Notes: generated by a model not told the origin, from the sequence alone. A stretch of DNA of 64,000 bases from Podarcis muralis (GCF_964188315.1 NC_135662.1:7688001-7752000), one strand, 5' to 3'; counted from the stretch's first letter, positions 4,977 to 24,583 are shown. Numbers and translations are program-made.

Positions 4977-5718
4977 AATATTCCTATATGAAAACCCATG
5001 CCCAAAGTGGCTTACAACATCAACAAAACAGGGATGCATTTCAAACGAACCAAAAACAATTTCATAATAACAAAACAACAACAACAACATAGTGATAATA
5101 TCATGATAACACGGGAAAACAAATATATAGTAACATAAAATAAACCACATGTCAATACTATAAGAAGGTCACCTAAACAGCATGTAGCCTCCAACATCAA
5201 AAATAACAAGGGAGCTTCCCAATAACTCTCTCATTCAAGGGTATTTGTTTTAGTACCTTGAGACTAAGGGTGGATGAGCAATCTTCAGATTTGTTGATCA
5301 CACGACAAGAGCAGCCTGCTGGGACGGCAGGTGTGTGTGGGGGGGATGTGATACCAGTTGTGTCCCAAAGAGGAATGTACAATTTTTCTATTCTCAGTCC
5401 AAGTTGTACAGATGATTCCACCTGATCTTTGTCTTGTCTATTTCAGCTTGTGTAATATAGGTGTACAGTGTGGAGCATTTTGAGCTATAGGGCATTATAT
5501 CTCCATAGCCAACATTTCAGGGGCCATATACCATGGTGGGGGGGGGGGGGGGACACAGAAGAAAAATTGGGAGTAGAAGAAACATGACTCCTGCCTTTGT
5601 AGAGTGGGATACATTTCAACTGCACAAACCTCAAAATTGTCAACAAAACCCCAGCCACTTTTTCTGGTGAGCAAGAGTCATCAATGCAGTCCAAGGACAT
5701 AATACAGCCAAAGAACTC

Positions 5719-6726
5719 TTATGAAAGGTTCCTAAGTGGGATCGAACAAGGAGGGTCCATTTCCTGTCTGTCATTCTCCTCCTCATTCAAAACCCGCTGG
5801 AGGATGACCAGTAGACCCTCCCTAGATTGACCTCCCTTCTTCCTCCCAACCAGAAAATAAAGCAAGGGGTTCACACTGCTGTTGAGGGAGGCACACAAAT
5901 AGGCATAATGGAATGGAATGGGAATATTCAGGTCTACAATGAATATATCGAGATAAATGGCATTGAGTGGAAAAGCAAGCATGAGGAAGAAGAGGAGTGT
6001 AAGTAAAATAACCGTTAAAAGCCTTCCCAGCATTCGTGGGTGTGATTTAAAACAGACTTTGATGAAAATAATCACAGCTGAAATCGTCATAAGTGGGAAG
6101 GAAAGCAGTCCAGTCAAGAGAAATTGAAAATTTGCTGTGAGGATATAATGATAGATGTTATCTGGTGTAAAGGGTAATGTTGTTGAGATAATGAAGAGGA
6201 CTATGGAGAGCAGACAGGAGAGGACCCATATGAGGGCACACAAAGTGGTGGGCAAATGGGTCGGCCGAACACACCGATGCCAAATAGGGAAGAGGACAGA
6301 CACACATCTGTCAATGCTGATGGCTGTCAGAAGAAGTTGGCCAGTGTTGTATGTGAAGGATAAGAGATGATTAGCAATTATATAAAGAACATAAGCAAAG
6401 TGAGTAAACCTAATAAAAACATGGAACTCTAGGCTCAGGAGCAATGCAAAGTCAGCAACAGCCAAATTAAGGATGTAGGTGGTGAACGGTTTCCTCCTAA
6501 TGCGGAAACCAAGAAGCCAGATCACAGTTCCATTCCCCAAAAATCCCACACAGCAGATAACTAAAATAAAGCCATATATTATAGATTCTTCATATTCTTC
6601 ATATTGGAAATTTCCTTGGTCATTAGATGAGCTATTATAAGTTTCATCATACTCATTATCTGTCACAGCAACCGCAGCAGATTGCAAAGTCCCATTGATA
6701 TTTATTTCCATGTTGAATGACTGCAT
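5719..6726 (-). CDS. MAS-related GPCR (MAS1/MRGPR family), tandem copy 1, intact, 335 aa, single coding exon
   Basis: Seven hydrophobic segments with MRGPR-type motifs GNGTVIWLLGF (TM1), FTTYILNLAVAD (TM2), LTAISIDRCVSVLFPIWHRC (TM3), LNSSVNPLLYFLVG (TM7). Splice acceptor ttttctatttcctag lies 39 nt upstream of the ATG. Exact orthologue cannot be assigned by eye. Confidence 0.96.
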   Translation of the reverse strand: MQSFNMEININGTLQSAAVAVTDNEYDETYNSSSNDQGNFQYEEYEESIIYGFILVICCVGFLGNGTVIWLLGFRIRRKPFTTYILNLAVADFALLLSLEFHVFIRFTHFAYVLYIIANHLLSFTYNTGQLLLTAISIDRCVSVLFPIWHRCVRPTHLPTTLCALIWVLSCLLSIVLFIISTTLPFTPDNIYHYILTANFQFLLTGLLSFPLMTISAVIIFIKVCFKSHPRMLGRLLTVILLTLLFFLMLAFPLNAIYLDIFIVDLNIPIPFHYAYLCASLNSSVNPLLYFLVGRKKGGQSREGLLVILQRVLNEEENDRQEMDPPCSIPLRNLS

Positions 6727-7212
6727 GTGGAAATGTTGTCTCCTCTTCTGGAGCAGAAGTTTCCTCTAGGAAATAGAAAATATCACAAAGATGTTTGACT
6801 CAGCTGGAATTCTGTGCAAAACCCAGAACTGTGAGACCCAGAAGCCCATTGAACAACATATAAACCTACAACATCTGTCTGTCAAGCAAAAAGTCATATA
6901 TGTGCAATTCTCTGTAATATAACTGAATCTCCCACATGGGCCACACCCCTCTGGATTTTTTTCTCATTGAGTTTTGATTGGTGCCAAGAGAAGAAGTCAG
7001 TACAGGATTCCCTGGCATTATTGTCTGGTATGTAATGTCTCTCCAAAATAGGGGTTCAGTCATATTTCTTTTGCTATGGCCAAGCTCATCATTCCTGCTT
7101 AGGAGTAGATATCAGTAAGCATGAAGGAGATGGACTGAGACAGAATGAGAAAGAAGCCACCTTGTTTAGGGAAAGATTGATATCAAGTTTTATTGCAGTG
7201 AATTTCACTTAC

Positions 7213-7297
7213 CTACTGCACATTCATCCAGGTGGGTGGGACTATCTTCCAATGCAATAAGAGCAGGCTAGGAATGAATGAGGGTGTGCAGGAGGTT
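7213..7297 (-). other. Predicted 85-nt non-coding 5'UTR exon of receptor copy 1 (intron 6766-7212)
   Basis: Minus strand: branch-like cctgac, then ctctctttcag acceptor at 7298, and donor cagtag|gtaagt at 7212. Conserved in copies 2 and 3. Confidence 0.7.
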
Positions 7298-8134
7298 CTG
7301 AAAGAGAGGTCAGGCAGTAATGTCACATTTTTTCTTATTACGTATAACTCTTTTTGTTGTTCAGTTCCTAGGATTCTCCCCAAAATAGAGCAAGCTTTCT
7401 GATATGTCTATATTGGCGCCCCCCTAACCAAGAAGGCTGTTTTTGACAGATGGGAAGCAAACATGTGGGGGAGGGGCAGCTGTTTACCCAAGTAGTAGTA
7501 GCACCTTTAAGAAGCAAACATATTTGATAGATAAACAAGTTAACAGATACCCCTGGTGGTGGTGATTCAGAAGATTTATAATACTCTCCCTTCCAAATGC
7601 CCCAGCCATTTTCCTAGTGCAAGGCAGCTGAGCATTAGCACTTGCGCTGTTGCTTTAGCTACAATTGAGAGCTGGTGGCATCACACCTTCCTGGCTTTCA
7701 GGCTGGCCTTAATCCAGGCAGCTGTTTACATCTACATCCCCTTCCTCCACAGTAGCCTCATACACAGCATGCTCGGAAGACTTAGCAGTCCTCCTTGCCT
7801 ACCAGGTTCTCTTCTTCTGTAGTCCTGAGGCTGATGGGGAAATTTCCAAGAGTTAGCAAAACACAAGTGGCTAATGTGCAGACCTCTGGTGATGGGGTAG
7901 GGATGTAACTTACCTTCACTTGTAAGGACCAAGAGTAAGGAAAGTGCTCTACTGGCATTCTGAGTGTTGACTCAAAGAGTGACTTTTAGAATGGGGAGAA
8001 ACAAACTCTTCAGTGTGATAACTATTCTTCTTTTGCTTCACGCTAAGGGTTTAGTCACTCACAGAACAGAGGAAGGAATTCAAGAATTAAAGAGAGTGTA
8101 TATGTTTATATATTAAGTGGAATCCCATCATTAT

Positions 8135-8198
8135 GTTAGCGGAGTCTGTAACCTAAAGAATATGTAACCTGAAGCGTATGTAACCCGAGGTACCACTG
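8135..8198. mobile_element. Right-hand remnant of the site-1 MITE in unit 2
   Basis: gttagcggagtctgtaacctaaagaatatgtaacc...gaggtaccactgTAatctc shares the junction and the taaagaatatg variant with 775-1010. The left part is lost in a deletion. Confidence 0.8.
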
Positions 8199-9329
8199 TA
8201 ATCTCATTGTGTCTGGATATCATGTTTGTACTCTCCCTTGGCAAAACCTCAGGAAGTCACCTTCCTGAGTCTGAGTTAGACTATTGTTCTATCAAGATCA
8301 GGACTTGTCAAACAGACTCTCAGTGCCACTCTGTAGCATTTTTAAAAGTGGTCTTTTCAACCCTACCTGGAGGTGCCGGGAATCAACCTTCTGCAAGCAC
8401 CACAGCCATGGCCTTTCCTGTGAATGTTTCACCCAACCTTCTGACTAACTGCAGATCAGCAGTCTTCAGAGATGGTGAGTGCAAGAGAACAAGGACACAA
8501 CAACTATGACTGGAATGGCAGGTCCATGCACTTAAGAGAAAAAATATGGCCCCACTCATACCCCAGGAGAAAATGTAAAATCATACCAGTCTCACTCAAA
8601 GGTGCAAAACGGTCCCTCCTGTTCTTCGTCTGGGTTTAATTTGATTCTTTGCCTCATAAGACAAGAGGATGCTCTTTAATGGGATATGAAGATAATTATC
8701 AGTTCTCCATGGAGGAGGAGACTATTGTCATATATGTCCCAGAAGGCTACAGTCATGAAGACTAGGTTTGTAATTGGTTCTGGAGGAAGCAGCTCATGTC
8801 TCACATACTTCTTTATCTGTACCAGACAAATGGAATAAATCAAGACCTCATCCCCAGATTTCTAATCAAGGCTGTCTAAGCAAGATAACAACTTCCTGGC
8901 CTTTTAACGGCCAAAAGCATTTGTCCCTATGTGCCTTTTATGGTGTGGGGGAATTGACTATTAGTGGGGAGACATGACTACATAGGGTGGGAGGGGAGAT
9001 TGCTCTTGAGCAGGCCAACTAGGTGGAGGGGGGCAAGGAATCAGAGTCATTTATTTATTTTCATTTATTTATTTTCATTTATTTCATAAAATATATATAC
9101 TGCTTGAATGTAAAAAAGAAAAAAAACAACAACAACCCAAAAGCAGCTTACAAAAGAATAAACAGAAAAATCAAGAAAAATCACAACCATACTTTAAAAC
9201 ATGCCAAAGTTAAAATACTGAAGCAGATCAAATATATGTTAAGCTTCTTTCCATGTTATATTGTACTTGCAGTATTATCATTTGAACTCCAATTAACTTT
9301 AATATCTATTTAATATCTACGGTATATGA

Positions 9330-10180
9330 AGCCATTGGATGTGGCCATTAGGAGTTTTGGAGCAAGGTATCAGCAGTGTGATGATGTTGACACATCTTTC
9401 CCTTTCTATAACATAGGAATTGGGAGAGGCTGTAAATGCTTTGAACCGGTATCTGGATGCAGTAGTGGTCTGGATGAGGGCTGAAATCTATTAAGATGCG
9501 GGCTCTTTGGGTGGGTGGTTCCCGTGTTTTGGAAATTGGCAAGTTCCCTGTTCTGAGTGGGGTTGCACTCTCTTTGAAGGAGCAAGTGTGAAGTTTGGCG
9601 GTACTTCTGGATACATCTCTGTCACTAGATGCTCAGGTGTCCTCTGTGACTAGGAGTGCCTTTTCCAGCTATGGCAATTCCTGGACAGGGATAGCCTGAC
9701 TACTGCAAGAGCATATATTGGTAACCTCATGGCTAGATTACTGTGATGTGCTTGATGTGGGGCTGCTCTTGGGTCTGGTTTGGAAGTTCCAGCAGATGCA
9801 GAATGCTGCTGCCAGATTGCTGATGGGAGCTTCTCGTTGAGAACATGTGATGCCATTATTAAAACAGCTGTTCTGGCTGCTCCTGAGCTGGGTTCAAGAT
9901 TCTTGCATTGATTTACCCAGCCCCGAACAACTTGGCTCTAGGATACCTCAGGGATCACCTGAACCCTTATATTCCAGCTTGAGGAATTAGGCCATTTGCA
10001 TAAGTATCTTTGGTCTTTCTCTCTGTTGTTGAGGTTCATTTGACAACAAAAATAATTGAAGCCTGGTCCTGTGGAACACCCTGCTGATAGAGATTTGGTA
10101 GCCACTTTCTGTGTCAACTTTTAAGTTCCTGCTGAAAACTTTTCTATTGTGCGAGGCCTATACGAGCAATTAGAGTACTG
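9330..10180 (+). mobile_element. Ancient, degraded L2-like ORF2 relic (paralogue ~26940-27790; shorter pieces at ~2376, 3880, 10985, 16920, 18383)
   Basis: Remnant translations DDVDTQLSFS, LDAVVVWMRADQLCLNS and QQMQNAAARLL resemble YADDTQLY, WMRANKLKLNP and QNAAARL of L2 reverse transcriptases. Confidence 0.7.
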
Positions 10181-11790
10181 TACTTCCTCCACAATTGTCT
10201 ACTGATATTTGTTGTTGTTGTTGAAAATACCCTTTAATATCCATACTGTCAGGAGGTCCTACACATGAGTAGGAGTCCGGCAGAGACACATGCCCGACTG
10301 GCATGTTCTCTCCCTCCTGGTCATTCGTTTGGGAGATTCAAAAGCTTTCTCCAGTGTGAACATCACAGCGATTGGTACCAAGAGGCATCAGCACACTTCA
10401 GGATCTGCAGCATAAAGGCCATCGGTGTTCAGACTTAGTAGCACAGCAATTTGGCTAAACTACTTTTAATCACATATATACACTCGGAGCATCGTAACTC
10501 AGCACCTTCCTCTTCAGCATCAGACTGCAAAGAAAGAGAACAAGGGACAAAAATCCTACATCATGGAAACGCAGTAATAAAAACATCCTGTCTCTGACAC
10601 TTACCACAATGTGGAATGAAAACATATACCTTCATGTGATAAAAACAATCCCATGACTGCAACACAGGGAGTGAATCCTAGCACATACTGCTATTGGCAT
10701 GTTCTATTATCTCTTTATTATTATTTTTAATATTGTTATTTTTAGTAGTTTTATTTTTCTTATGTGTATTATTAGTTGGAGTATTGTTCAGCTCAGATCT
10801 TTGTCTGGGCTGAACAATGGGGATGGAGATGCTCTTTGAGTTAATTAGCAGGCAATTTAATGGTTAAAATACTGAAGCAGATCAAATATATGCTAAGCTT
10901 CTTTACTTGATATATTGTGCTTATGATAATATTATTTGAACTCCAATTAACATTAATATTAATATTTTTTAATATCTATATGTAGCCATCGGATGCGGTC
11001 ATTAGCAGTTTTGGAGGAAGTTATCTGCTGTACGATATGATGTTAACACACAACTCTCCTTTTCCATAACATATGAATCGGGAAAGGCTATGAAAGCTTT
11101 GAACCAGTGTATAGATGGAGTAGTGGTCTGGATGAGGGTTGATCAACTGTGTTTGAATTCTAGGAAGATGGAGCTCTTTGGGTGGGTGGTCCTCATGTTT
11201 CGGAAATTGGCAAGTTCCCTTTTCTGAGTGTGGCTGCACTCCCTTTGAAGGAGCGAGTGTAAAGTTTTGCGCCAGGACATTTGCAAGTGATAAGACATGA
11301 AAACAATGCTTGAACTTAAAATGAGAAGTGTTTATTTAACACAACTACTGTAAAGGTCTGCAAATGGGTAACAGTTTCTATATAATGAAATTTCCAATGG
11401 CATGAGCTCCTATACATCTGAGGCATAATGTTCTTGTACCTATCACTTCAAAGTGTTGGGCAAGCTCCATTAACTCAGGGACCCAGATTAGTTAATTCCC
11501 TGCCCGTAGTCATTTCTTGCAGGTACATTAACAATGCAATCCAAACCCCAGATTTGCCGAAATTATGGAGTCTAAAATTTCATTTCATTCATTTTCAACC
11601 CCCCCCCCCCCGCATTCCCATACGGAACCCCATGCCCAAAGTGGCTTACAAGAACAAAACAGGGATGCATTTCAAACAAACCATACAAAAACAATTTCAT
11701 AATAACAAAACAACAACAACGTAGTGATAATATCATGATAACATGGGAAAACAAATATATAATAACATAAAATAAACCACATGTCAATAC

Positions 11791-11843
11791 TAGTATAGTA
11801 TAGTATAGTATAGTATAGTATAGTATAGTATAGTATAGTATAG
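11791..11843. repeat. (TAGTA)n pentanucleotide microsatellite unique to unit 2
   Basis: Directly visible. Units 1 and 3 have only caatactataa at this site. Confidence 0.95.
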
Positions 11844-12400
11844 CTGTCACCTAAACAGCATGTAGCCTCCAACATCAAAAATAACAAGGGAGTTTCCCAA
11901 TAACTCTCTCATTCAAGGGTATTTGTTTTAGTACCTTGAGAATATGGGGGGATAAGCAATCTTCAGATTTCTTGATCACAAGACAAGAGCAGCCTGCTGG
12001 GATGGCAGGTGCGAAAGACATATGGAAAAAATGTGGTACCAGTTGTGTCCCAAAGAAGTATGTACAATTTTTCTATGCTCAGTCCAAGTTGTACAGATGA
12101 TTCAAACCAATCTTTGTCTTCTCTATTTCAGCTTGTGCACTATAGGCACACAGTGTGGAGTATTTTAAGCTGTAGGGCTTTATATCTCCATGGCCAACAT
12201 TTCAGGGGCTGTATACCATGGGTGGGGGGGGGGGGGCACAGAAAAAAATTGGGAGAAGAAAAAACATGACTCCTGCCTTTGTAGAGTAGGATACATTTCA
12301 AATACACAAACCTCAAAATTTTCAACAAAACCCAAACTTCTTCTTCTGGTGAGCAAGAGTCATCAATGCAGTCCAAGGATATAAAACAGCCAAAGAACTC

Positions 12401-13408
12401 TTACGAAAGGTTCCTAAGTGGGATCGAACAAGGAGGGTTCATTTCCTGTCTGTCATTCTCCTCCTCATTCAAAACCCGCTGGAGGATGACCACTAGGTTC
12501 TCCCTAGATTGACCTCTCTTTTTCCTCCCAACCAGAAAATAAAGCAAGGGGTTCACACTGCTGTTGAGGGAGGCACACAAAAAGCCATAACGGACTGGAA
12601 TGGGAATTTTCAGGAGTAAAATTAATCTACCGAGAAGAAAGGCATTGAGTGGAAAAGCAAGCATGAGGAAGAAGAGGAGTGTAAGTAAAATAACAATTAA
12701 AAGCCTTCCCCGCTTTCTTGGGTGTGATTTAAAACAGACTTTGATGAAAAGAATCACAGTTGAAATTGTCATAAGTGGGAGACAAAGCAGTCCAGTCAAG
12801 AGAAATTGAAAATTTGCTGTGAGGATATAATGATAGATGTTATCTGGTGTAAAGGCTAATGTTGTTGAGATAATGAAAAGGACTATGGAGAGCAGACAGG
12901 AGAGGACCCATATGAGGGCACACACAGTGGTGGACAAATGGGTAGGCCGGACACACCGATACCAAATAGGGAAGAGGACAGACACACATCTGTCAATGCT
13001 AATGGCTGTCAGAAGAAGTTGGCCAGTGTTGTATGTGATGGTTAAGAGACGATTAGCAATAATATAAAGAACATAACCAAAGTGAGTAAACCTAATAAAA
13101 GCATGGAACTCTAGGCTCAGGAGCAATGCAAAGTCAGCAACAGCCAAATTAAGGATGTAGGTGGTGAACGGATTCCTCCTAATGTGGAACCCAAGAAGCC
13201 AGATGACAGTTCCATTCCCCAAAAATCCCACAAAGCAGATAACTAAAATAAAGCCATATATTATAGATACTTCATATTCCTTATATTTGAAATTTCCTTG
13301 ATCATCAGATGAGCTATTATAAGTGCCATTGTACTCCTTATATGTCACAGCATCCGCAGCAGATTGCAAAGTCCCATTAATTTGTCTTTCCATGCTGAAT
13401 GACTGCAT
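12401..13408 (-). CDS. MAS-related GPCR, tandem copy 2, intact, 335 aa
   Basis: Same motifs as copy 1 (DRC, NPLLY), open frame, acceptor 39 nt upstream of the ATG. Confidence 0.96.
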   Translation of the reverse strand: MQSFSMERQINGTLQSAADAVTYKEYNGTYNSSSDDQGNFKYKEYEVSIIYGFILVICFVGFLGNGTVIWLLGFHIRRNPFTTYILNLAVADFALLLSLEFHAFIRFTHFGYVLYIIANRLLTITYNTGQLLLTAISIDRCVSVLFPIWYRCVRPTHLSTTVCALIWVLSCLLSIVLFIISTTLAFTPDNIYHYILTANFQFLLTGLLCLPLMTISTVILFIKVCFKSHPRKRGRLLIVILLTLLFFLMLAFPLNAFLLGRLILLLKIPIPVRYGFLCASLNSSVNPLLYFLVGRKKRGQSRENLVVILQRVLNEEENDRQEMNPPCSIPLRNLS

Positions 13409-13892
13409 GTGGAAATCTTGCCTCCTCTTCTGGAGCAGAAGTTTCCTCTAGGAAATGGAAAAGATCACAAAGATGTTTGACTCAGCTGGAATTCTGTGCA
13501 AAACGCAGAACTGTGAGACCCAGAAGCCCATTGAACAACATATAAACCTACAACATCTGTCTATCAAGCAAAAAGTCATATATGTGCAATTCTCTGCAAT
13601 ATAACTGAATCTCCCACATTGGACACCCCTCTGGATTTTTTTCTCATTGAGTTTTGATTGGTGCCAAGAGAAGAAGTCAGTACAGCATTCCCTGGCATTA
13701 TTGTCTGGTATGTAATGTCTCTCCAATATTGGGGTTCAGTCATATTTCTTTTGCTATGGCCAAGCTCATCACGCCTGCTTAGGAGGAGATATCAGTAAGG
13801 ATGAAGGAGATGAACTGGGACAGGATGAGAAAGACACCTCCTTGTTTTGGGAAAGATTGATATAAAGTTTTATAGCAGTGAATTTCACTTAC

Positions 13893-13977
13893 CTACTGCA
13901 CATTCATCCAGCTGGGTGAGGCTATCTTCCAATGCAATAAGAGCAGGCTAGGAATTAATGAGGGTGCGCAGGAGGTT
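13893..13977 (-). other. Predicted 85-nt 5'UTR exon of copy 2 (intron 13448-13892)
   Basis: Same acceptor and AG|GTAAGT donor as in copy 1. Confidence 0.7.
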
Positions 13978-16685
13978 CTGAAAGAGAGGTCAGGCAGTAA
14001 TGTCACATTTTTTCTTATTACGTATAACTCAGTTTTCTTTTTGTAGTTCAGTTCCTAGGATTCTCCCCAAAATAGAGCAAGCTTTCTGATATGTCTATAT
14101 TGGCTCCCCCCTAACCAAGGAGGCTGTTTTTGACAGATGGGAAGCAAACATGTGGGGGAGGGGCAGCTGTTTACCCAAGTAGTAGTAGCACCTTTAAGAA
14201 GCAAACATACTTGATAGATAAACAAATGAACAGATACCCCTGGTGGTGGTGATTCAGAAGATTTATAATACTCTCCCTTCCAAATGCCCCACCCATTTTC
14301 CTAGTGCAAGGCAGCTGAGCATTAGCACTTGTGCTGTTGCTTTAGCTACAATTGAGAGCTGGTGGCATCACACCTTCCTGGCTTTCAGGCTGGCCTTAAT
14401 CCAGGCAGCTGTTTACATCTACATCCCCTTCCTCCACAGTGGCCTCATACACAGCATGCTCGGAAGACTTAGCAATCCTCCTTGCCTACCAGGTTCTCTT
14501 CTTCTGTAGTCCTGAGGCTGATGGGGAAATTTCCAAGAGTTGGCAAAACACAAGTGGCTAATGTGGAGACGTCTGGTGATGGGGTAGGGATGTAACTTAC
14601 CTTCACTTGTAAGGACCAAGAGTAAGGAAATGCTCTACTGGCATTCTGAGTGTTGACTCAAAGAGTGACTTTTAGAAAGGGGAGAAAAAAACTCTTCAGT
14701 GCGATAATGACCCAGTCTATTCTGCATACCCGTTAAAATACATTAATCTCCTTGTGTCTGGATACAATGTTTGTTCTCTCTCTTGGCAAAACCTCAGGAA
14801 GTCACCTTCCTGAGTCTGAGTTAGACTATTGGTTTAGCAAGATCAGAACTTGTCAAACAGACTCTCAGTGCCACTCTCTAGCATTTTAAGAAGTCCTCTT
14901 TCCAACCCTACCTAGGGGTACTTGGGAATTAACCTCTTGCAAGCACTGCAGCTCTGGCCTCTCCTGTAAATGTTTCACCCAACCTTGTGACTAACTGCAG
15001 ATCAGAAGACTTCAGAAATGGTGAGTGCAAGAGAACAAGGACACAGCATCTTGCACTGGAATGGCAGGTCCTAAGGACTTAAGAGAGAGAAAAAATGTGT
15101 CCCCACTCATGCCCCTTGGAGAAAATGTAAAATCTTACCAGTCTCACTCAAAGGTGCAAAACGGTCCCTCCTGTTCTTCATCTGGGTTTAATTTGATTCT
15201 CTGCCTCATAAGACAAGAGGATGCTCTTTAATTGGATATGAAGATAATTATCTATTCTCCATGGAGGAGGAGACTATTGTCATTTATGTCCCAGAAGGCT
15301 ACAGTCATGAAGACTAGGTATGTAATTGGTTCTGGACGAAGCAGCTCATGTCTCACATACTTCTTTATCTGTACCAGACAAATGGAATAAATCAAGATCT
15401 CATCCACACATTTCTAATCAAGACTGTCTAAGCAAGATAACAACTTCCTGGCCTTTTAACGGCCAAAAGCATTTGTCCTGTATGGGTCTTTTATTGGGTG
15501 GCAGAAATGTCTATTGGTGGGGGAGACATGATTACCAAGGGCGGGAGGTTACGCAAACTAGGTGGAGGGGGCAAGCATTCAGAGTCATTTGCTGTGACTC
15601 ATTGAAAGGAGCAGATCCACCAGGTCATCCTTCTCCTCCCCACCTTCATTAGCAGGCAATTCCATGGTAACCCCCTGACTCTCACTCTAACTGTCACAAC
15701 CACCATGTTCGACTTTTTCTGCCTCTCTCTGACCCTCACTCCCTCTATGGTAAACCCCTGGGCTGAGCCTCAAAACCAGGTAGGTTCTGCCTCTGAGCTT
15801 TCTCATTGGTCAATCTACATTAACCATTTCCATCCCCCTATACAAACATAACCACAAGGAATAGGCAAATGCCACATCAATGTCACATTTATTTCTTTTC
15901 ATTTATTTCATAAAATTTATACACTGCTTGATTGTAAAAAAGAAAAAAAAAACACCCCAAAGCAGCTTACAAATGAATAAACAGAAAAACCAAGAAAAAT
16001 CACAACCATACTTTAAAACATGCAAAAGTTAAAATACTGAAGCAGATCGAATATATGTTAAGCTTCTTTACATGATATATTGTGCTTACAGTATTATCAT
16101 TTCAACTCCAATGAACATGTCTCACATACTTCTTTATCTGTACCAGACAAATGGAATAAATCAAGATCTCATCCACAGATTTCTAATGAAGGCTTTCTAA
16201 GCAAGATAACAACTTCCTGGCCTTTTAACGGCCAAAAGCATTTGTCCCTATGTGCCTTTTATTGGGTTGGGGGAGTTGACTATTGGTGGGGAGACATGAC
16301 TACCTAGGGTGGGAGGGAAGGTTGCTCTTGAGTAGGCCAACTAGGTGGAGGGGGGCCAGGAGTCAGAGCCATTTGCCCATGGAAGGGAGCTGATCCACCA
16401 GGTCATCCGTCATGCCCCCCTTCATTAGCAGGCAATTCCATGGTAACCAATGTAATGTTTATTTCTTTTCACTTATTTCATAAAATTTATACACTGCTTG
16501 ATTGGAAAAAAAATACCCCAAAGCAGCTTACAAAAGAATGAACAGAAAAATCACGAAAAATCACAACCATACTTTAAAACATACAAAAGTTAAAATACTG
16601 AAGCAGATTGAATGATGCTAAGCTTTGCTATGATATATTGTGTTTGCGGTAATATTATTTGAACTCCAATTAACATTAATATCTA

Positions 16686-16903
16686 CAGTAGTACCTCGGG
16701 TTAAGAACATAATTCGTTCCGGAGGGCCGTTCTTAACCTGAAAATGTTCTTAACCTGAGGTACCACTTTAGCTAATGGGGCCTCCCGCTGCCGCCGCCAT
16801 GAGATTTCTGTTCTCATCCTGAAGCAAAGTTCTTAACCTGAGGTACTATTTCTGGGTTACCAGAATCTGTAACCTGAAGCATCTTTAACCCGAGGTACCA
16901 CTG
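16686..16903. mobile_element. Tigger-like MITE, site 2 copy in unit 3
   Basis: TIRs and flanks match those of 2152-2360. Confidence 0.85.
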
Positions 16904-17967
16904 CATTTAATATATGTATGAAGCCATTGGATGTGGTCATTATGAGTTTTGGAGCAAGGTGTCAGCACTGTGATGATGTTGACACACAGCTCTCCTTTTC
17001 CATAACATATGAATTGGGAAAGACTGTGAAAACTTGGAAGCAGTATCTTGATGCAGTAGTGGTCTGGATGAGGGCTGATCAACTGTGTTTGAATTCGAGG
17101 ACTATGGGGGCTCTTTGGGTGGGGAGGGGTTCCCCATGTTTTGGAAACTGGCAAGTTCCCTGTTCCGAGTGGAATTGTGATCCCCTTTGAAGGAGCCAGT
17201 GTGAAGTTTGGGGGTAGTTCTGGATTCATCTGTGTCACAGGATGCTCAGATGTCCCCTGTCTCTTCCATTCAGAACGCTGGATTGTATTTTGGTTGACTC
17301 TTGCACCAGGACATTTGCAAGTGATGAGATGTGAAAGCAGTGTTTGGATTTAAAATGTGTCAGGCTTATTTAACACAGTTAAAGTTCTGCAAATGGGTAA
17401 CAGTTACTATATAAAGGAATTCCCAACAGCATGAACTCCTATACATCTGAGGCATAATGTTGCTGTATCTATCACTTCAAAGTGTTGGTCAAGCTCCAGA
17501 GTAGTTTATTCCCTGCTCACAGTCATTCCTTGGAGGTGCAGTTACAGTACAATCCAAACCCAAGATCTGTCAGGATTAATGAGTTTAAAATTTCTTTCCA
17601 TTCATTTTGTTTCCCCCCATTTTCACACACAAAATCCCATGTCCAAAATGTCTTACAAAAAAAGAAAGAAACAGGGATACAGTAAAACACACACACACAC
17701 ACACACTACAAAAAAGCATTTGTCCTGCATGTGTCTTTTATTGGGTGGGGAAGGTGACTATTGGTGTGGAGACATTATTGCCTACGGTAGAGTGGGGGGT
17801 TGCTCTGGAGTACCCAAGTATGTGGAGGGAGGCAAGGAGTCAGAGCCATTTGCTGTGACTCGTGGAAGGGAGATGATCCACCCGGTCACCCATCTCTACT
17901 CTTTAATGATGATGATGATGATAATTAATAATAATTATACCCCAGCCACTGTGGGTGGCACCCAACG

Positions 17968-17999
<32 letters not shown>

Positions 18000-19844
18000 A
18001 TAATAAAATGCCAAGATATCGAACATTAAAAACATCCCTGAACAGGGCTGCCTTCAGTTGTCTTCTAACAGTCAGATACTTGTATATTTCCTTGACACAT
18101 AATTGGAGGGCATTCCACAGGGCAGGCGCCACTACAGAGAAGGCCCTCTGCCTGGTTCCCTGTAACCTCACTTCTGGCAGTGAGGGAATTCCCAGAAGGC
18201 CCTCGGAGTAGGGCCTCAGTGTCTGGGCTGAACAATGGGGATGGAAACGCTCTTTCAGGCAATTCAATGGTTAAAATACTGAAGCAGATCAAATATATGG
18301 TAAGCTTATTTACATAATATATTGTGCTTACGATCATATTATTTGAACTCAAGTTAACATTAATACCTAGTTAATATCTATATGAAGCCATTGGATGCGG
18401 TCATTAGAATTTTGGAGCAAGTTATCAGCAGTGTGGTATGATGTTAACACACAACTCTCCTTTTCCACGACATATGAATCGGGAGAGGCTGTGAAAGCTT
18501 TGAACCAGTGTATAGATGGAGTAGTGGTCTGGATGAGGGTTGATCAACTGTGTTTGAATTCCAGTAAAATGGGGCTCTTTGGGTGGGTGGTCCCCATTTT
18601 TTGAAAATTGGCATGTTCCCTTTTCTGAGTGGGGTTGCACTCCCTTTGAAGAGGCGAGTGTAAAGTTTTGGGTACTTTGGGTACATCTCTGTCACCAGAT
18701 GCTCAGATGTCCTCTGTGTCCACCGTTCACAACTCTGGATCATATTTTGGTTGACGCTTGCGCCAGGACATGTGCAAGTCATGAGATGTGAAAACAATGC
18801 TTGGACTTAAAATGAGAAGTGTTTACTTAACGTAACTACTGTAAAGGTCTGCTAATGGGTAACAGTTACTATATAAAGGAATTTTCAATGGCATGAGCTC
18901 CTATACATCTGAGGCATAATGTTGTTGTACCTATCACTTCAAAGTGTTGGCCAAGCTCCATTAACTCAGGGACCCAGATTGGTTAATTCCCTGCCCGCAG
19001 TCATTTCTTGCAGGTACGTTAACAATGCAATCCAAACCCAAGATTTGCCGAGATTACGGAGTAAAAAATTTCATTTCATTCACTTTATCCCCCCCCCCCC
19101 ATATTCCCATACGAAAACCCATGCCCAAAGTGGCTTACAACAACAAAACAGGGGTACATTTCAAACAAACCATACAAAAACAATTTCATAATAACAAAAA
19201 ACAACAACGTAGTGATAATATCATGATAACATGGGAAAACAAATATATAATAACATAAATTAAAGCACATGTCAATACTATAACAAGGTCACCTAAACAG
19301 CATGTAGCCTCCAACATCAAAAATAACAAGGGAGCTTCCCAATAACTCTCTCATTCAAGGGTATTTGTTTGACTACGTTGAGACTAAGGTTGGATAAGCA
19401 ATCTTCAGATTTCTTGATCACAAGACAAGAGGAGCCTGCTGGGATGGCAGGTGCGAAGGACTTGTGGGGGGGAAATGTGATACGAATTGTGTCCCAAAGA
19501 AGAATGTACAGTTTTTCCATTCTCAGTCCAAGTTTTACAGATGATTCCACCCGATCTTTGTCTCGTCTATTTCAGCTTGTGCAATATAGGTGCACAGTGT
19601 GGAGCATTTTTAGCTGTAGGGCTTTATATCTCCATGGCCAACATTTCAGGGGCTGTATACCATGGTGGGGGGGGGGGACACAGAAGAAAAATTGGGAAAA
19701 GAAAAAAACATGACTCCTGCCTTTGTAGAGTAGGATACATTTCAACTACACAAACCTCAAAATTGTCAACAAAACCCAATCCTCTTTTTCTGGTGAGCAA
19801 GAGTCATCAATGCTGTCCAATGACATAATTCAGCCAAAAGATTC

Positions 19845-20846
19845 TTATGAAAGGTTTCTAAGTGGGATCGAACAAGGAGGGTCCATTTCCTGTCTGTCAT
19901 TCTCCTCCTCATTCAAAACCCGCTGTAGGATGACCAGTAGGCTCTCCCTAGATTGACCTCCCTTCTTCCTCCCAACCAGAAAATAAAGCAAGGGGTTCAC
20001 ACAGCTGTTGAGGGAGGCACACAAATAGGCATAATGGGATGGAATGGGAATATTCAGGCCTACAATCAATTCACTGAGATGAATGGCATTGAGTGGGAAA
20101 GCAAGCATGAGGAAGAAGAGGAGTGTAAGTAAAATAACCGTTAAAAGCCTTCCCCGCTTTCGTGGGTGTGATTTAAAACAGACTTTGCTGAAAAGGATCA
20201 CAGTTGAAATTGTCATGAGTGGGAGGCAAAGCAGTCCAGTCAAGAGAAATTGAAAATATGCTGTGATGATACGATGAAAGATGTCATCTGAAATAAGGAA
20301 AGATGTCAATTTGAGAATGTAGAGGACTATGGAGAGCAGACAGGAGAGGACCCATATGAGGGCACACACAGTGGTGGACAAATGGGTCGGCCGGACACAC
20401 CAATGCCAAATAGGGAAGAGGACAGACACACATCTGTCAATGCTGATGGCTGTCAGAAGAAGTTGGCCAGTGTTGTATGTGAAGGAGAAGAGACATTCAT
20501 CAATACTATCAAGAACATCATCAGGAAAGCTAATAAAAGTATGGAACTGTAGGCTCAGGAGGAATGCAAAGTCAGCAACAGCCAAATTAAGGATGTAGGT
20601 GGTGAATGGTTTCCTCCTAATGCGGAAACCAAGAAGCCAGATCACAGTTCCATTCCCCAAAAATCCCACACAGCAGATAACTAAAATAAAGCCATATATT
20701 ATAGATTCTTCATATTCCTTATATTGGAAATCTTCTTGGTCATTATATGAGCTATTATACGTTTCATCATACTCATTATCTGTCACAGCATCAACAGCAG
20801 ATTGCAAAGTCCCATTGATATTTATTTCCATGTTGAATGACTGCAT
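19845..20846 (-). CDS. MAS-related GPCR, tandem copy 3, intact, 333 aa
   Basis: Same motifs. ECL1 is two codons shorter, and ECL1/ECL2 are divergent and acidic. Confidence 0.96.
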   Translation of the reverse strand: MQSFNMEININGTLQSAVDAVTDNEYDETYNSSYNDQEDFQYKEYEESIIYGFILVICCVGFLGNGTVIWLLGFRIRRKPFTTYILNLAVADFAFLLSLQFHTFISFPDDVLDSIDECLFSFTYNTGQLLLTAISIDRCVSVLFPIWHWCVRPTHLSTTVCALIWVLSCLLSIVLYILKLTSFLISDDIFHRIITAYFQFLLTGLLCLPLMTISTVILFSKVCFKSHPRKRGRLLTVILLTLLFFLMLAFPLNAIHLSELIVGLNIPIPSHYAYLCASLNSCVNPLLYFLVGRKKGGQSRESLLVILQRVLNEEENDRQEMDPPCSIPLRNLS

Positions 20847-21338
20847 GTGGAAATGTTGTCTCCTCTTCTGGAGCAGAAGTTTCCTCTAGGAAATAGAAAA
20901 GATCACAAAGATGTCTGACTCAGCTGGAATTTTGTGCAAAACCCAGAATTGTGAGAGTGAGGAGCCCATTGAACAACACATAAACCTACAACATCTGTCT
21001 ATCAAGCCAAAAGTCATATATGTGCAATATATCTGCAATATAACTGAATCCCCCACATAGGCCACACCCCTCTGGATTTTTTCTCATCGAGTTTTGATTG
21101 GTGCCAAGAGACGAAGTCAGTACAGCATTTCCTGGTCTTCTGGCATTATTGTCTGATATGTAATGTCTCCAAAACTGAGGTTCAGTCATATTTCTATTGC
21201 TATTGCCAAGCTCATCATTCCTGCTTAGGAAGAGATATCAGTAAGGATGAAGGAGATGGACTGAGACAGAATGAGAAAGATGCCACCTTATTTAGGGAAA
21301 GATTGATATAAAGTTTTATAGCAGTGAATTTCACTTAC

Positions 21339-21423
21339 CTACTGCACATTCATCCAGCTGGGTGGGGCTATCTTCCAATGAAATAAGAATAGACTAGGAA
21401 TTAATGAGGGTGTGCAGGAGGTT
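21339..21423 (-). other. Predicted 85-nt 5'UTR exon of copy 3 (intron 20886-21338)
   Basis: Same acceptor and AG|GTAAGT donor as in copy 1. Confidence 0.7.
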
Positions 21424-21855
21424 CTGAAAGAGAAGTCAGGCAATAATGTCACATTTTTTCCTATTATGTATAACACAGTTTCCTTCTTGTTGTTCAGTTC
21501 CTAGGATTCTCCCCCCAAAAGAGCAAGCTTTCTGATATGTCTATATTGGCGGCTTGCCTACCAGGTTCACTTCTTTTGTAGTCCTGAGGTTGATGCGGAA
21601 ATTTCCAAGAGCTGGCAAAAACCCAAGTAGCTAACGTGAAGACCTCTAGTGATGGGGTAGGGATGTAACTTACCTTCACTTGTAAGGACCAAGAGTAAAG
21701 GAAGTGTTCTACTGGCATTATGAGTGTTGACTCAATGAGTGACTTGTAGAAAGGGGAGTAATGAACTCTTCGGTGGGATAACTATTGTTCTGTAGCTTCA
21801 GGCTAAGGATTTAGTAACTCACAGAACGGAGAAAGGAATTCAAAAGGATTCAAAA

Positions 21856-22517
21856 GGGAATTTTCAGGCGTAAAATTAATCTACAGAAAAGAATGACATT
21901 GAGTGGAAAAGCAAACATGAGGATGAAGAGGAGTGTAAGTAAAATAACTATTAAATGCCTTCCCCGCTTTCGTGGGTGTGATTTAAAACGGACTTTGATG
22001 AAAAGGATCACAGTTGAAATTGTCATGAGTGGGAGGCAAAGCAGTCCAGTCAAGAGAAATTGAATATATATATATGCCAAATAGGGAAGAGGACAGACAC
22101 ACATCTGTCAATGCTGATGGCTGTCAGAAGAAGTTGGCCAGTGTTGTATGTGAAGTATAAGAGACAAAAAGCAATACTATGAAGAACATAATCAGGAAAC
22201 CTAATAAAAACATAGATCTCTAAGTTCAGAAGGAATGCAAAGTCAGCAACCGCCAAATTACGGATGTAGGTGGTGAACGGTTTCCTCCTAATGCGGAAAC
22301 CAAGAAGCCAGATGACAGTTCCATTCCCCAAAAATCCTACACAGCAGATAATTAAAATAAAGCCATATATTATAGATTCTTCATATTCTTCATATTGGAA
22401 ATTTCCTTGGTCATTAGATGAGCTATTATAAGTGCCATTGTACTCCTTATATGTCACAGCATCCACAGTAGATTGCAAAGTCCCATTGATATTTATTTCC
22501 ATGCTGAATGACTGCAT
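21856..22517 (-). pseudogene. MAS-related GPCR pseudogene (copy P4): TM4/ECL2 deleted with frameshift, 3' end truncated in ECL3
   Basis: ORF 22050-22517 matches copies 1-3 up to VLFPIW, then frameshifts at a (TA)n filler (22065-22073). The TM5-TM6 remnant QFLLTGLLCLPLMTIS...LKIPF is in another frame and then fuses to spacer DNA at ~21856. Confidence 0.93.
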
Positions 22518-22617
22518 GTGGAATCCTTGTCTCCTCTTCTGGAGCAGAAGTTTCCTCTAAGAAATGGAAAATATCACAAAGATGTTTGACTCAGCTAGAA
22601 TTCCATGCAAAACCCAG

Positions 22618-23298
22618 CCAATCGGTCAATCGGTGCCAAAGAAGGATAGAATTTTCTTTATGTATGCTACAACAGCAGCAAGAATACTCATCGCAAAGTA
22701 CTGGAAGACACAAGATCTACCCACCAGGGAAGAATGGCAGATGAAGGTGATGGACTATATGGAACTGGTGGAAATGACTGGCAGGATCCGAGACCAGGGA
22801 GAAGAGTCGGTGGAGAAAGATTGGAAGAAATTTAAAGACTACTTACAGAAACATTGTAAAATTAATGAATGTTAGAAAGATATTGGAATGAACTTATGTG
22901 GTTTTAGCAGAAATGTTATAAAGGATTAAGAAAAAATAGACTGTTAATTGGTGAAACGAGGGAAAGTAAAGTTATATTATATTAAGATAAATTACAGGAC
23001 AAAAATTGGAAAAGATGGAAAGGATTTGCTGAAATAGTTAACTGAACTAGAATACAAAAAAGGGAGGTGTGAGGAGGTCAAGGAAACAAGCTAACGAAAG
23101 ATAAGTTATGGGAAGATTCGATGTGTTATTTTGTTAATGGATTTTATTTTTCTGTTTTCGTATTTTATTTTTCTTTTTTTTCTTTTTCTTTTCTTATTAT
23201 GATGTGTTGGTTTTGATGTTGTTTAATATGATGTTTTTACTTTTTCTTTTTGTAACCCTTAAAACCTTAATAAATATTATTTTAAAAAAACCAAAAAG
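22618..23298 (+). mobile_element. L1/Tx1-clade LINE 3' fragment
   Basis: ORF2 C-terminus FMYATTAARILIAKYWKTQDLPTREEW...WKKFKDYL, long AT-rich 3'UTR, aataaa and A-rich tail. Same family as 62804-63662. Confidence 0.85.
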
Positions 23299-24067
23299 AA
23301 ACCTAAGTAGCTAATGTGAAGACCTCTGGTGATGGGGTAGGGATGTAATTAGCCTTCACTTGTAAGGACCAAGAGTAAGGAAAGTGCTCCACTGACATTC
23401 TGAGGGTCATTCTGAGGGTTGACTCAATGAGTGAATGAGAGTGTATATGTTTATATATTAAGCGGAATCCCCTCATTGTGTTTGCTTCTAGGAACATGGC
23501 TATCTGCTCCCTTCGTATTGCCTTAATAAGACTTAATAAGACTCAAGACCTCATCCCCACATTTCTAATCAAGGCTGTCTAAGCAAGATAACAACTTCCT
23601 GGCCTTTCAACGGCCAAAAGCATTTGTCCCTATGTGCCTTTTATTGGGTGGGGGAGGTGGCTATTGGTGGGGAGACATGCTTCCCTAGGGCAGGAGGGAA
23701 GGTTGCTCTTGAGTAGGCCAACTATGTGGAGGAGGGCAAGGAGTCACAACCCTTGGAAGGGAGCTGATCCACCAGGTCATCCGTCATGCCCCCCTTCATT
23801 AGCAGGCAATTACATGGTAACCAATGTAATGTTTATTTCTTTTCACTTATTTCATAAAATTTATACACTGCTTGATTTTTTTTTTAAAAAACACACCCCA
23901 AAGCAGCCTACCAAAGAATGAAGAGAAATAATCAAGTAAAATCACAACCGTACTTTAAAACATGCAAAAGTTAAAATACTGAAGCAGATTGAATAGATGC
24001 TAAGCTTTGTTATGATATATTGTGTTTAAGGTAATATTATTTGAACTCCAGTTAACATTAATATCTA

Positions 24068-24301
24068 CAGTAGTACCTCGGGTTAAGAACTTAATTTGTT
24101 CCGGAGGGCTGTTCTTAAACTGAAACTGTTCTTAACCTGAAGCACCACTTTAGCTAATGGGGCCTCCTGCTGCCGCCACCATGCGATTTCTGTTCTCATC
24201 CTGAAGCGAAGTTCTTAACCTGAGGTACTATTTCTGGGTTACCAGAGTCTGTAACCAGAAGTGTCTGTATCCTGAAGCTTCTTTAACCCGAGGTACCACT
24301 G
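24068..24301. mobile_element. Tigger-like MITE, site 2 copy in unit 5
   Basis: Same TIRs. A deletion 5 nt beyond its right end joins directly to receptor fragment P5. Confidence 0.85.
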
Positions 24302-24306
24302 CATTT

Positions 24307-24583
24307 AAGTCAGCAACAGCCAAATTAAGGATGTAGGTGGTCAACGGTTTCCTCCTAATGCGGAAACCAAGAAGCCAGATGACCGTCCCATTCCCCAAAA
24401 ATCCCACACAGCAGATAACTAAAATAAAGCCATATCTTATAGATTTTTCGTATTCCTTATTTTGAAATTTCCTTGGTCATTATATGAGCTATTATAAGTG
24501 CCATTGTACTCCTTATATGTCACAGCATCCACAGCAGATTGCAAAGTCCCATTAATTTGTCTTTCCATGCTGAATGACTGCAT
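24307..24583 (-). pseudogene. MAS-related GPCR 5' fragment (copy P5), N-terminus to TM2 only, with a 1-nt frameshift
   Basis: Reverse strand reads ATGCAGTCATTCAGCATGGAAAGACAAATT (MQSFSMERQI). One base is missing near 24460 relative to copy 2 (ccttat-tttgaaa vs ccttatatttgaaa). The sequence ends after NLAVAD, abutting a MITE. Not in the supplied ORF track. Confidence 0.92.

What the first reader, a model, noticed from the sequence alone, without database searches (positions are those of the whole stretch)
5719..24583. Receptor array whose extracellular modules are shuffled combinatorially between copies
Seen: the five tandem receptor copies are nearly identical in the TM cores and intracellular loops, but differ in blocks at the ligand-facing parts, and the blocks group differently. 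N-terminus DNEYDE (copies 1, 3) vs YKEYNG (2, P4, P5). ECL1 long THF.YVLYIIAN (1, 2) vs two-codon-shorter PD.VL.SI (3, P4). ECL2 TTL.FTPDNIYHYILTAN (1, 2) vs LTSFLISDDIFHRIITAY (3). ECL3 LNIPIP.HYAYL (1, 3) vs RLIL.LKIP (2, P4). No single tree fits these groupings. Established: MRGPR clusters expand lineage-specifically and act as itch, pain and mast-cell sensors. Inference: this lizard locus may generate new ligand pockets by exchanging loop-sized tracts, with the broken copies acting as a reservoir of donor modules. This is the best candidate in the window for an undescribed system.
Basis: partly seen in the sequence, partly recalled or inferred. Interest (0 to 1): 0.82.

Follow-up and report, generated by a model that had tools for sequence, protein, structure and literature searches.

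The report
Lizard itch-receptor gene array, fast-evolving loops
A tandem array of Mas-related receptor genes in the common wall lizard has outward-facing loops that evolve under strong diversifying selection, and the copies occasionally exchange short DNA tracts; this is the ordinary behaviour of young receptor gene clusters, not a new shuffling system.

Summary
The window is Podarcis muralis OZ076961.1:7688001-7752000. It holds three intact MRGPR-H-like genes (C1, C2, C3), two broken copies (P4, P5) and a divergent sixth copy. The array continues to the left of the window with at least five more copies.

The variable blocks exist and group the copies in conflicting ways. None of the 15 possible trees of the five closest copies is accepted by all four blocks (AU test). 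PHI and ILD tests give p≤0.0005.

- The loops differ mainly through excess amino-acid-changing substitutions: 69 nonsynonymous against 6 synonymous changes, omega about 3.4, against 0.4 in the rest of the gene. Synonymous divergence is flat at about 0.10, so the TM cores are conserved by purifying selection and are not homogenised.
- The recombination signal is equally present in the non-coding flanks (PHI p=0.002), so exchange is not aimed at the loops.
- Among the three intact copies the four blocks show only two groupings. These are carried by nonsynonymous sites only.
- A few short exchange tracts of 74-100 nt are supported, and two candidates involve the pseudogenes. The direction of transfer is unknown.

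Diversifying selection combined with interlocus gene conversion, including pseudogene partners, is already described for other receptor families. I class this as a new member of a known kind.

The parts
5719..6726 (-). C1, intact MRGPR-H-like gene, 335 aa
   Evidence: ORF. Pfam 7tm_1 E=2e-16. PDB MAS1/MRGPR matches E=1e-48. DRC and NPLLY motifs present.
12401..13408 (-). C2, intact copy, 335 aa. It carries an extra N-glycosylation sequon (NGT at residue 27).
   Evidence: Pieces are present at 97-100% identity in independent individuals.
19845..20846 (-). C3, intact copy, 333 aa. It lacks the 6-nt ECL1 insertion of C1 and C2.
21853..22517 (-). P4, pseudogene in two pieces (22074-22517 = CDS nt 1-450; 21853-22067 = nt 596-810). 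The 145-nt deletion shifts the frame, and homology is lost after about nt 810.
   Evidence: blastn, alignment, translations.
24307..24583 (-). P5, 278-nt 5' fragment of a copy with a 1-nt deletion near nt 120
29005..30042 (-). Copy 6, a divergent intact paralogue (64% nt and 42% aa identity to C1) at the upstream end of the array
12557..12630 (-). ECL3 tract of C2 (CDS nt 779-852). It is identical to the non-adjacent copy C0 across 15-27 polymorphic sites and is the best-supported exchange tract.
   Evidence: Run test p=0.001-0.003. In the ECL3 block C2-C0 differ at 3 of 69 nt, against 12-15 for C2 with C3, C1 or Cm1. At least six of the shared states are derived relative to Cm2/Cm3.
13309..13408 (-). 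N-terminal tract of C2 (nt 1-100), which differs from pseudogene P5 (24484-24583) at 1 of 100 nt while neighbouring segments differ by 7-15%
   Evidence: The strict run test did not reach significance.
22358..22431 (-). P4 tract (nt 87-160) identical to C1 (6567-6640) across 22 polymorphic sites
   Evidence: pairwise p=0.003, Bonferroni 0.095.
20481..20564 (-). ECL1 block of C3. It is 5 of 90 nt from the distant copy Cm2 (about 37 kb away) and 12-18 from all other copies.
   Evidence: Block tree places (C3,Cm2) with 82% support. ILD of ECL1 against the other blocks p=0.001.
6037..6567 (-). Central part of C1 (nt 160-690, ECL1 to ECL2). It is nearer to C2 (4.7%) than to C3 (9.9%), and the reverse holds at the ends. 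The pattern is carried by nonsynonymous sites only.
4978..8021 (-). Best-conserved core of the 6.7-7.9 kb tandem repeat unit. Equivalent stretches are 11614-14707 and 19101-21551. Flanks are 89-92% identical between units.
   Evidence: Self-blastn, spacer comparison.

Best explanation
[quoted passage not shown] It arose in the Podarcis lineage.

**Selection.** The repeat units are about 7 kb long and have diverged by 8-10% at neutral sites everywhere. In the membrane cores, intracellular loops and C-tail, purifying selection removes amino-acid changes. In the extracellular loops and the adjoining helix tips that line the ligand pocket, diversifying positive selection fixes them. The proteins therefore look identical in the cores and scrambled in the loops.

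**Exchange.** Because the units are about 90% alike over kilobases, they occasionally exchange sequence by interlocus gene conversion or unequal crossing-over. This happens in coding and non-coding DNA alike. It becomes visible at the protein level only where it crosses a variable block, which gives the impression of loop modules being shuffled.

**Shown:** family membership, the array structure, flat dS with loop omega above 1, rejection of a single tree, and a recombination signal in the flanks.

**Inferred:** that the conflicting groupings in the coding blocks are due to exchange rather than parallel adaptive change, the tract boundaries, and the ligand-driven nature of the selection.
For: **Family and topology**
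- Pfam 7tm_1.
- Best PDB sequence matches are MAS1, MRGPRE, X4, D, X1 and X2, E=1e-48 to 1e-35.
- Public names of homologues are MRGPR-H-like or Mas-like.
- There is no Cys at position 3.25, Ala stands at 6.48, and ECL2 has no Cys.

**Array**
- The window sits at OZ076961.1:7688001-7752000, shown by an exact overlap.
- At least 11 copies are present.
- Units and spacers are 84-92% identical.
- The five closest copies are monophyletic against Lacerta and Zootoca copies in both the core (88%) and extracellular (90%) partitions.
- dS is 0.10 among the five copies, 0.137 to Lacerta/Zootoca copies and 0.065 for the Cm3 / P. raffonei pair.

**Selection**
- dS is 0.098 in the extracellular blocks and 0.104 in the core.
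- dN is 0.25-0.31 in the three ECL blocks (omega 3.4-13.6) and 0.03 in the core (omega 0.29).
- With zones fixed a priori from predicted helix ends, the ECL zones show 69 nonsynonymous against 6 synonymous changes. The binomial test gives p=0.0006, and Fisher against the rest gives p=2e-7.

**Conflict and exchange**
- Nine of the ten possible 2|3 splits are seen among 53 informative sites.
- PHI p=0.0002 for the CDS, 0.0024 for the non-coding flanks and 0.0002 for the whole unit. The fraction of incompatible site pairs is 0.45 in the CDS and 0.55 in the flanks.
- ILD p=0.0005.
- AU tests: no topology passes all four blocks. ECL1 accepts only trees with (C2,C1), and ECL3 rejects all such trees.
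- Segmentation with three or more breakpoints beats permuted site orders (p=0.003). Breakpoints fall in both coding and non-coding DNA.
- Nine of ten synonymous informative sites are compatible with the nearest nonsynonymous site (read from the table; binomial p of about 0.02 by my hand calculation).

**Not an assembly artefact locally**
- Contigs from independent individuals and from another species label match C2 with 0-4 differences per 100-300 nt. They span the N-terminal and ECL3 tracts.
Against: - Synonymous sites alone do not show recombination inside the CDS. PHI on third positions gives p=0.40 from only 16 informative sites.
- The centre-versus-ends pattern of C1 is absent at synonymous sites.
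- 43 of the 53 informative coding sites are nonsynonymous. Parallel adaptive substitution could therefore contribute to the conflict, and HKY+G does not model it.
- The tract tests are only marginal after multiple-test correction.
- Block boundaries were chosen after seeing the variation. One search repeats the test with a priori zones, but these come from a low-confidence model (pLDDT 44).
- No expression or ligand data are available.
Confidence: 0.72

Rival explanations
1. Selected cassette shuffling. Short loop-sized tracts are exchanged among copies, with P4 and P5 kept as donor reservoirs. New combinations of pocket loops are the adaptive product.
For: - The supported tracts are short (74-100 nt) and lie on variable blocks: C2=C0 in ECL3 and C3~Cm2 in ECL1.
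- The pseudogenes share near-identical N-terminal tracts with intact copies.
- The highly conserved TM cores flanking each block would be natural substrates for exchange.
- ECL1 of C2 may vary between individuals.
Against: - Non-coding flanks carry the same recombination signal and the same incompatibility level, so there is no sign of targeting.
- Tracts can be detected only where sites vary, so a loop-sized appearance is expected from detection bias.
- Loop diversity is explained by omega above 1 with flat dS.
- No tract is identical over more than about 100 nt, and all pairs are 5-10% diverged, so exchange is infrequent and mostly old.
- The direction of transfer from the pseudogenes is unknown.
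- The P4-C3 'module' in ECL1 is not real.
Confidence: 0.12
2. No exchange within the genes. A single duplication tree holds, and the conflicting block groupings come from copy-specific bursts of adaptive substitution, retention of ancestral states and parallel selection for the same residues.
For: - For C1, C2 and C3 the mosaic is carried by nonsynonymous differences only, and synonymous distances are flat along the gene.
- 43 of 53 informative sites are nonsynonymous.
- Both N-terminal motif types recur in Zootoca and Lacerta copies, although the N-terminal tree does not group copies by motif. This may be convergence.
Against: - C2 and C0 share at least six derived states within 40 nt and are identical over 74 nt.
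- A 6-nt insertion and the upstream non-coding DNA (3.3% against 7.4-7.9%) link C1 with C2, while the N-terminus and ECL3 link C1 with C3.
- PHI is significant in non-coding DNA.
- Synonymous informative sites follow the local split of their neighbours.
Confidence: 0.1
3. Assembly artefact. The mosaics are chimeras made by mis-joining or collapsing near-identical repeat units or haplotypes.
For: - The repeats are about 90% identical.
- Two runs of N lie in the window (28439-28572 and 37853-37980).
- Proteins from the older P. muralis annotation lack close counterparts here.
- X1 and X2 lack window 13039-13172 at 97% identity or better.
Against: - Ten per cent divergence is easy for modern assemblers to resolve.
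- Short contigs from independent individuals reproduce C2 across the N-terminal and ECL3 tract junctions with 0-3 differences.
- The same kind of conflict is seen in every copy and in the flanks.
Confidence: 0.04

Closest known systems
Mammalian MRGPR clusters (rodent Mrgpra/b/c, primate MRGPRX)
   Same: Same receptor family by sequence. Both show lineage-specific tandem expansion with pseudogenes and rapid evolution. Positive selection in MRG/MRGX genes is reported by Choi & Lahn 2003 and Yang et al. 2005, as cited and re-confirmed in PMC3221663. That the selection is concentrated in extracellular domains is my recollection of Choi & Lahn; the paper was not held.
   Different: This is an independent expansion in a squamate. 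It is related to the sauropsid MRGPR / 'MRGPRH-like' group, whose orthology to mammalian genes is unsettled (PMC6504862). Ligands, expressing cells and function are unknown here.
Interlocus gene conversion in segmental duplications and tandem gene families
   Same: Short tracts move between paralogues about 90% identical, in coding and non-coding DNA, giving site patterns that no single tree fits (PMC4467073 and PMC3790853).
   Different: Nothing mechanistic differs. Tracts here are few and mostly old.
Diversifying selection combined with gene conversion in recognition gene clusters (MHC; plant NBS-LRR clusters; olfactory-receptor clusters; S-locus with a preserved pseudogene)
   Same: Positive selection acts on ligand-contact residues together with conversion among paralogues (coffee SH3 cluster, PMC3113787). 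Pseudogenes take part in exchange (Takuno et al. 2008, Sharon et al. 1999 and Ohta 1991, as listed in PMC4467073).
   Different: The gene family and host differ. A donor role for the pseudogenes is not demonstrated here.
Programmed cassette diversification (chicken immunoglobulin V pseudogene conversion, trypanosome VSG, Neisseria pilin)
   Same: The only resemblance is superficial: variable segments flanked by conserved sequence, with silent partial copies nearby.
   Different: Those systems are somatic or clonal and directional. They have one expressed acceptor locus, many silent donors and dedicated machinery. Here several intact genes sit in a germline array with rare, old, untargeted exchange.

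Membership tests
MAS/MRGPR subfamily of class A GPCRs | Rhodopsin-type seven-helix receptor domain | tested here: met
   Pfam PF00001 scores 60-69 bits against a cut-off of 30.5 for C1, C2 and C3. Seven helices plus helix 8 are predicted (low confidence).
MAS/MRGPR subfamily of class A GPCRs | Closest characterised relatives are MAS1/MRGPR members rather than other class A groups | tested here: met
   The top 17 PDB sequences are MAS1 and MRGPRE/X4/D/X1/X2 (E=1e-48 to 3e-35). The next group, C3aR/FPR, starts at 4e-20. Source names of homologues are MRGPR-H-like or Mas-like.
MAS/MRGPR subfamily of class A GPCRs | Loss of the canonical TM3(3.25)-ECL2 disulfide and of the Trp6.48 toggle. This definition comes from my knowledge of MRGPRX2/X4 structures. 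| tested here: met
   Residue 3.25 is Tyr in C1 and C2 and Asp in C3. Residue 6.48 is Ala. ECL2 has no Cys. DRC and NPLLY are retained.
MAS/MRGPR subfamily of class A GPCRs | Expression in sensory neurons or mast cells, and an itch, pain or degranulation function | not testable with these tools
   Only short RNA-library contigs over conserved parts were seen, and they are not copy-specific.
Tandem gene family evolving by birth-and-death with positive selection and interlocus gene conversion | Head-to-tail paralogues including pseudogenes, with a lineage-specific clade | tested here: met
Tandem gene family evolving by birth-and-death with positive selection and interlocus gene conversion | dN/dS above 1 confined to ligand-contact regions, with dS uniform along the gene | tested here: met
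Tandem gene family evolving by birth-and-death with positive selection and interlocus gene conversion | Phylogenetic incongruence or recombination signal along the repeat, including neutral DNA | tested here: met
   PHI, ILD, AU and segmentation tests. The test on synonymous sites alone is underpowered.
Programmed or selected cassette-shuffling system with pseudogene donors | Exchange concentrated on the variable cassettes relative to the surrounding DNA | tested here: not met
   The flanks show PHI p=0.002 and 55% incompatible site pairs, against 45% in the CDS. Breakpoints occur in non-coding DNA.
Programmed or selected cassette-shuffling system with pseudogene donors | Directional transfer from silent or broken copies into expressed copies | tested here: inconclusive
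   P5~C2 and P4=C1 tracts exist, but their polarity cannot be read from one genome.
Programmed or selected cassette-shuffling system with pseudogene donors | Frequent, ongoing generation of new combinations (segregating or somatic) | not testable with these tools
   There is only a hint: the ECL1 stretch of C2 is missing in two individuals and present in others.

The most novel reading that the evidence does not exclude
The conserved TM cores act as recombination anchors, so that pocket loops are passed between copies as cassettes. This would include transfer from the broken copies P4 and P5. Selection would favour new loop combinations, and different wall-lizard individuals would carry different loop sets at the same array position. 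That would be a germline combinatorial repertoire for a chemosensory or immune GPCR family.
Probability: 0.1. Interest if true: 0.7.

Novelty: new member of a known kind. Interest (0 to 1): 0.3.

Why it matters
The array is a clear squamate example of what is known from mammalian MRGPR clusters: a rapid, lineage-specific expansion with strong diversifying selection on the ligand pocket. I found no description of lizard MRGPR arrays in the papers searched.

It gives a set of closely related natural receptor variants that differ almost only in pocket-lining loops. These could be used to map ligand specificity. They also raise the question of which ligands drive such selection in lacertids; candidates are cationic peptides, skin or femoral-gland chemicals, and microbial products.

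It does not reveal a new mechanism of diversification.

Tried and rejected
- **Two-gene duplication block.** I tested whether alternate copies are alike because a two-gene block was duplicated. All spacers resemble one another at 84-91% with no clear alternation, so I dropped the idea.
- **Trans-species loop modules with homogenised cores.** This was rejected. The five copies are monophyletic in the extracellular partition as well, the N-terminal tree does not group copies by motif type across species, and dS in the cores is not reduced.
- **A single central conversion tract making C1 a C3/C2 chimera.** Total differences support it, but synonymous sites do not. I kept it only as a possibility.
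- **AlphaFold model of C1.** The model was too poor (pLDDT 44) to map residues in three dimensions. Only the helix ends were used, and no fold search was run.
- **Choi & Lahn 2003.** The paper could not be read. Searches for 'Mrgpr' with 'gene conversion' and for lizard MRGPR found nothing relevant.
- **Reads.** The runs served are short Logan contigs. They confirm local sequence but cannot confirm which blocks sit together on one gene.
- **Run tests for pseudogene tracts.** The GENECONV-like tests were not significant after correction.


Full report
**What is there**

ORF listing and self-alignment show three intact 333-335-aa genes on the minus strand: C1 at 5719-6726, C2 at 12401-13408 and C3 at 19845-20846. 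Three further copies are present.
- P4 is a pseudogene in two pieces, 22074-22517 and 21853-22067. It has a 145-nt frame-shifting deletion and loses homology after about nt 810.
- P5 (24307-24583) is a 278-nt 5' fragment with a 1-nt deletion.
- A divergent intact paralogue lies at 29005-30042.

The genes sit in head-to-tail repeat units of 6.7-7.9 kb. The non-coding parts of these units are 84-92% identical, about the same as the coding parts.

An exact overlap with a fetched locus places the window at Podarcis muralis OZ076961.1:7688001-7752000. The array continues to the left of the window with C0 (intact), Cm1 (in-frame stop at codon 25), Cm2, Cm3 and Cm4.

**Family**

The proteins match Pfam 7tm_1. 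Their closest solved relatives are MAS1 and MRGPRE/X4/D/X1/X2, at E=1e-48 to 1e-35, far ahead of other class A receptors. Public annotations of homologues read 'MRGPR member H-like' or 'Mas-like'. DRC and NPLLY are kept. Position 3.25 is not Cys, position 6.48 is Ala, and ECL2 has no Cys. By my knowledge of the MRGPRX structures these are MRGPR hallmarks.

**Check of the observation**

The quoted motifs and groupings are present. Among the five closest copies (C3, C2, C1, C0, Cm1), 53 informative coding sites display nine of the ten possible 2|3 splits. These splits are spatially clustered.

Four formal tests agree that no single tree fits:
- PHI gives p=0.0002.
- A parsimony ILD test over all 945 seven-taxon trees gives p=0.0005 for the four blocks. 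The N-terminus and ECL3 are congruent with each other, and both conflict with ECL1 and ECL2.
- In ML AU tests none of the 15 five-taxon topologies is accepted by all four blocks. ECL1 accepts only trees with (C2,C1), and ECL3 rejects all of these.
- A dynamic-programming segmentation of the 2.7-kb unit needs three or more breakpoints, p=0.003 against permuted site orders.

The statement 'no single tree fits' therefore holds.

One detail fails. P4 does not share C3's ECL1 module: the two differ at 17 of 86 nt. They share only the lack of a 6-nt insertion that is specific to C1 and C2.

**Why the loops differ**

Nei-Gojobori estimates give the same synonymous divergence in the extracellular blocks (0.098) and in the cores (0.104). 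This is similar to the 8-10% divergence of the flanks. Nonsynonymous divergence is 0.25-0.31 in the three ECL blocks (omega 3.4-13.6) against 0.03 in the cores (omega 0.29).

Those blocks were drawn after seeing the variation, so I repeated the count with zones fixed beforehand. The zones were the predicted loops plus or minus 8 residues, taken from the helix ends of a low-confidence model, with each change counted once. The result was 69 nonsynonymous against 6 synonymous changes in the ECL zones. The binomial test gives p=0.0006 for an excess over neutrality. In the rest of the gene the counts were 45.5 against 35.5, and Fisher gives p=2e-7.

The N-terminus shows no excess (ratio about 0.5). 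The contrast between identical cores and different loops is therefore purifying against diversifying selection acting on uniformly diverged duplicates. The cores are not being homogenised, and the loops do not contain older imported DNA.

**Age and origin**

With Lacerta agilis, Zootoca vivipara and P. raffonei copies added, the five close copies form one clade in both the core (88%) and the extracellular (90%) partitions. Their mutual dS is 0.10. That lies between the dS to Lacerta/Zootoca copies (0.137) and the dS of the Cm3 / P. raffonei pair (0.065). The expansion is therefore specific to the Podarcis lineage.

**Is exchange aimed at loops?**

It is not. The non-coding flanks alone give PHI p=0.0024, with upstream 0.0018 and downstream 0.0088. 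In the flanks 55% of informative site pairs are incompatible, against 45% in the CDS. Segment boundaries fall in non-coding as well as coding DNA. Exchange can be seen only where sites vary, so tracts inevitably look loop-sized inside a gene whose cores are nearly invariant.

**How much exchange do the coding blocks require?**

For the three intact copies the four blocks show only two groupings. C1 is nearer to C2 in the centre (4.7% against 9.5%) and nearer to C3 at the ends (5.3% against 9.9%).

This reciprocal pattern is carried entirely by nonsynonymous differences. Synonymous distances are flat. It could equally be produced by copy-specific adaptive bursts, in C3 at ECL1 and ECL2 and in C2 at the N-terminus and ECL3.

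Exchange becomes necessary when the other copies are added:
- C2 and the non-adjacent C0 are identical over nt 779-852 across 15-27 polymorphic sites (p=0.001-0.003). They share at least six derived states within 40 nt.
- C3's ECL1 is 5 of 90 nt from Cm2, which lies 37 kb away, but 12-18 from all other copies. Cm2 differs from its overall sister Cm3 by 16 in the same block.
- P5 differs from C2 at 1 of 100 nt at the 5' end, against 7-15% in the neighbouring segments.
- P4 is identical to C1 over nt 87-160, pairwise p=0.003 and Bonferroni 0.095.
- Nine of ten synonymous informative sites are compatible with the split of their nearest nonsynonymous neighbour. I read this from the table; the binomial p of about 0.02 is my hand calculation.

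No pair shares long identical stretches, and every pair is 5-10% diverged throughout. Exchange is therefore sporadic and mostly old.

**Assembly**

Contigs from two other individuals of the same species label, and from one run of another species label, reproduce C2 and its flanks at 97-100% identity. They cover the N-terminal and ECL3 tract junctions. The local mosaics are therefore real. Linkage over a whole gene could not be checked.

One stretch, window 13039-13172 (the end of TM2 plus ECL1 of C2), is absent in both same-species individuals. It is held by other runs. This may be a segregating variant.

**Comparison with what is known**

Positive selection in MRG/MRGX genes is published, as cited in PMC3221663. 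Interlocus gene conversion in duplications is well described (PMC4467073). The combination of conversion with positive selection on contact residues is reported for recognition gene clusters (PMC3113787). So is the preservation of pseudogenes as conversion partners, in references listed. I found no paper on lizard MRGPR arrays.

**Verdict**

The mechanism is the ordinary one for young receptor arrays: diversifying selection plus untargeted interparalog exchange. This is a new member of a known kind. The selected loop-cassette reading is not excluded, but I give it about 10%.

Noticed in passing
L001:10001-11002, L001:17775-18776, L002:10001-10984, L002:14740-15708, L002:18417-19382 (left of the window): The array continues beyond the window start with C0 (intact), Cm1 (in-frame stop at codon 25), Cm2, Cm3 and the more divergent Cm4. 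Cm2 and Cm3 have a six-codon shorter ECL2.
   Followed up: yes
window 13039-13172: Two independent same-species individuals have zero contig depth (at 97% identity or better) over the end of TM2 and the ECL1 block of C2, although the rest of C2 is covered. Other runs hold 0.78-0.89 of this stretch's sampled words. This may be a segregating ECL1 variant.
   Followed up: partly
proteins P0006, P0012, P0017 (older P. muralis annotation): P0006 and P0012 have no counterpart at 90% identity or better in the 91 kb examined, so array content may differ between individuals or assemblies. P0017 looks like a gene model that joins the N-terminus of copy 6 to the body of P0006.
   Followed up: partly
window 29005-30042 (-): The divergent copy 6 is intact but has DSC in place of DRC and KPLIY in place of NPxxY.
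   Followed up: no
window 13325-13345 and 6643-6663; L004 copies: The two N-terminal motif types, D-N-E-Y-D-E and Y-K-E-Y-N-G, both occur also among Zootoca and Lacerta copies. The second type adds an N-glycosylation sequon (NGT) in C2. Whether this is an ancient dimorphism or convergence is unresolved.
   Followed up: partly
window 37776-40058 (+), N run 37853-37980: A long ORF has reverse-transcriptase-like sequence (LINE-type retroelement) and is interrupted by a run of N. A second run of N lies at 28439-28572, between P5 and copy 6.
   Followed up: no
L005 (P. raffonei): No receptor copy lies within 10 kb upstream of the P. raffonei orthologue of Cm3, whereas P. muralis has Cm2 3.8 kb upstream. 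Array structure therefore differs between Podarcis species.
   Followed up: no
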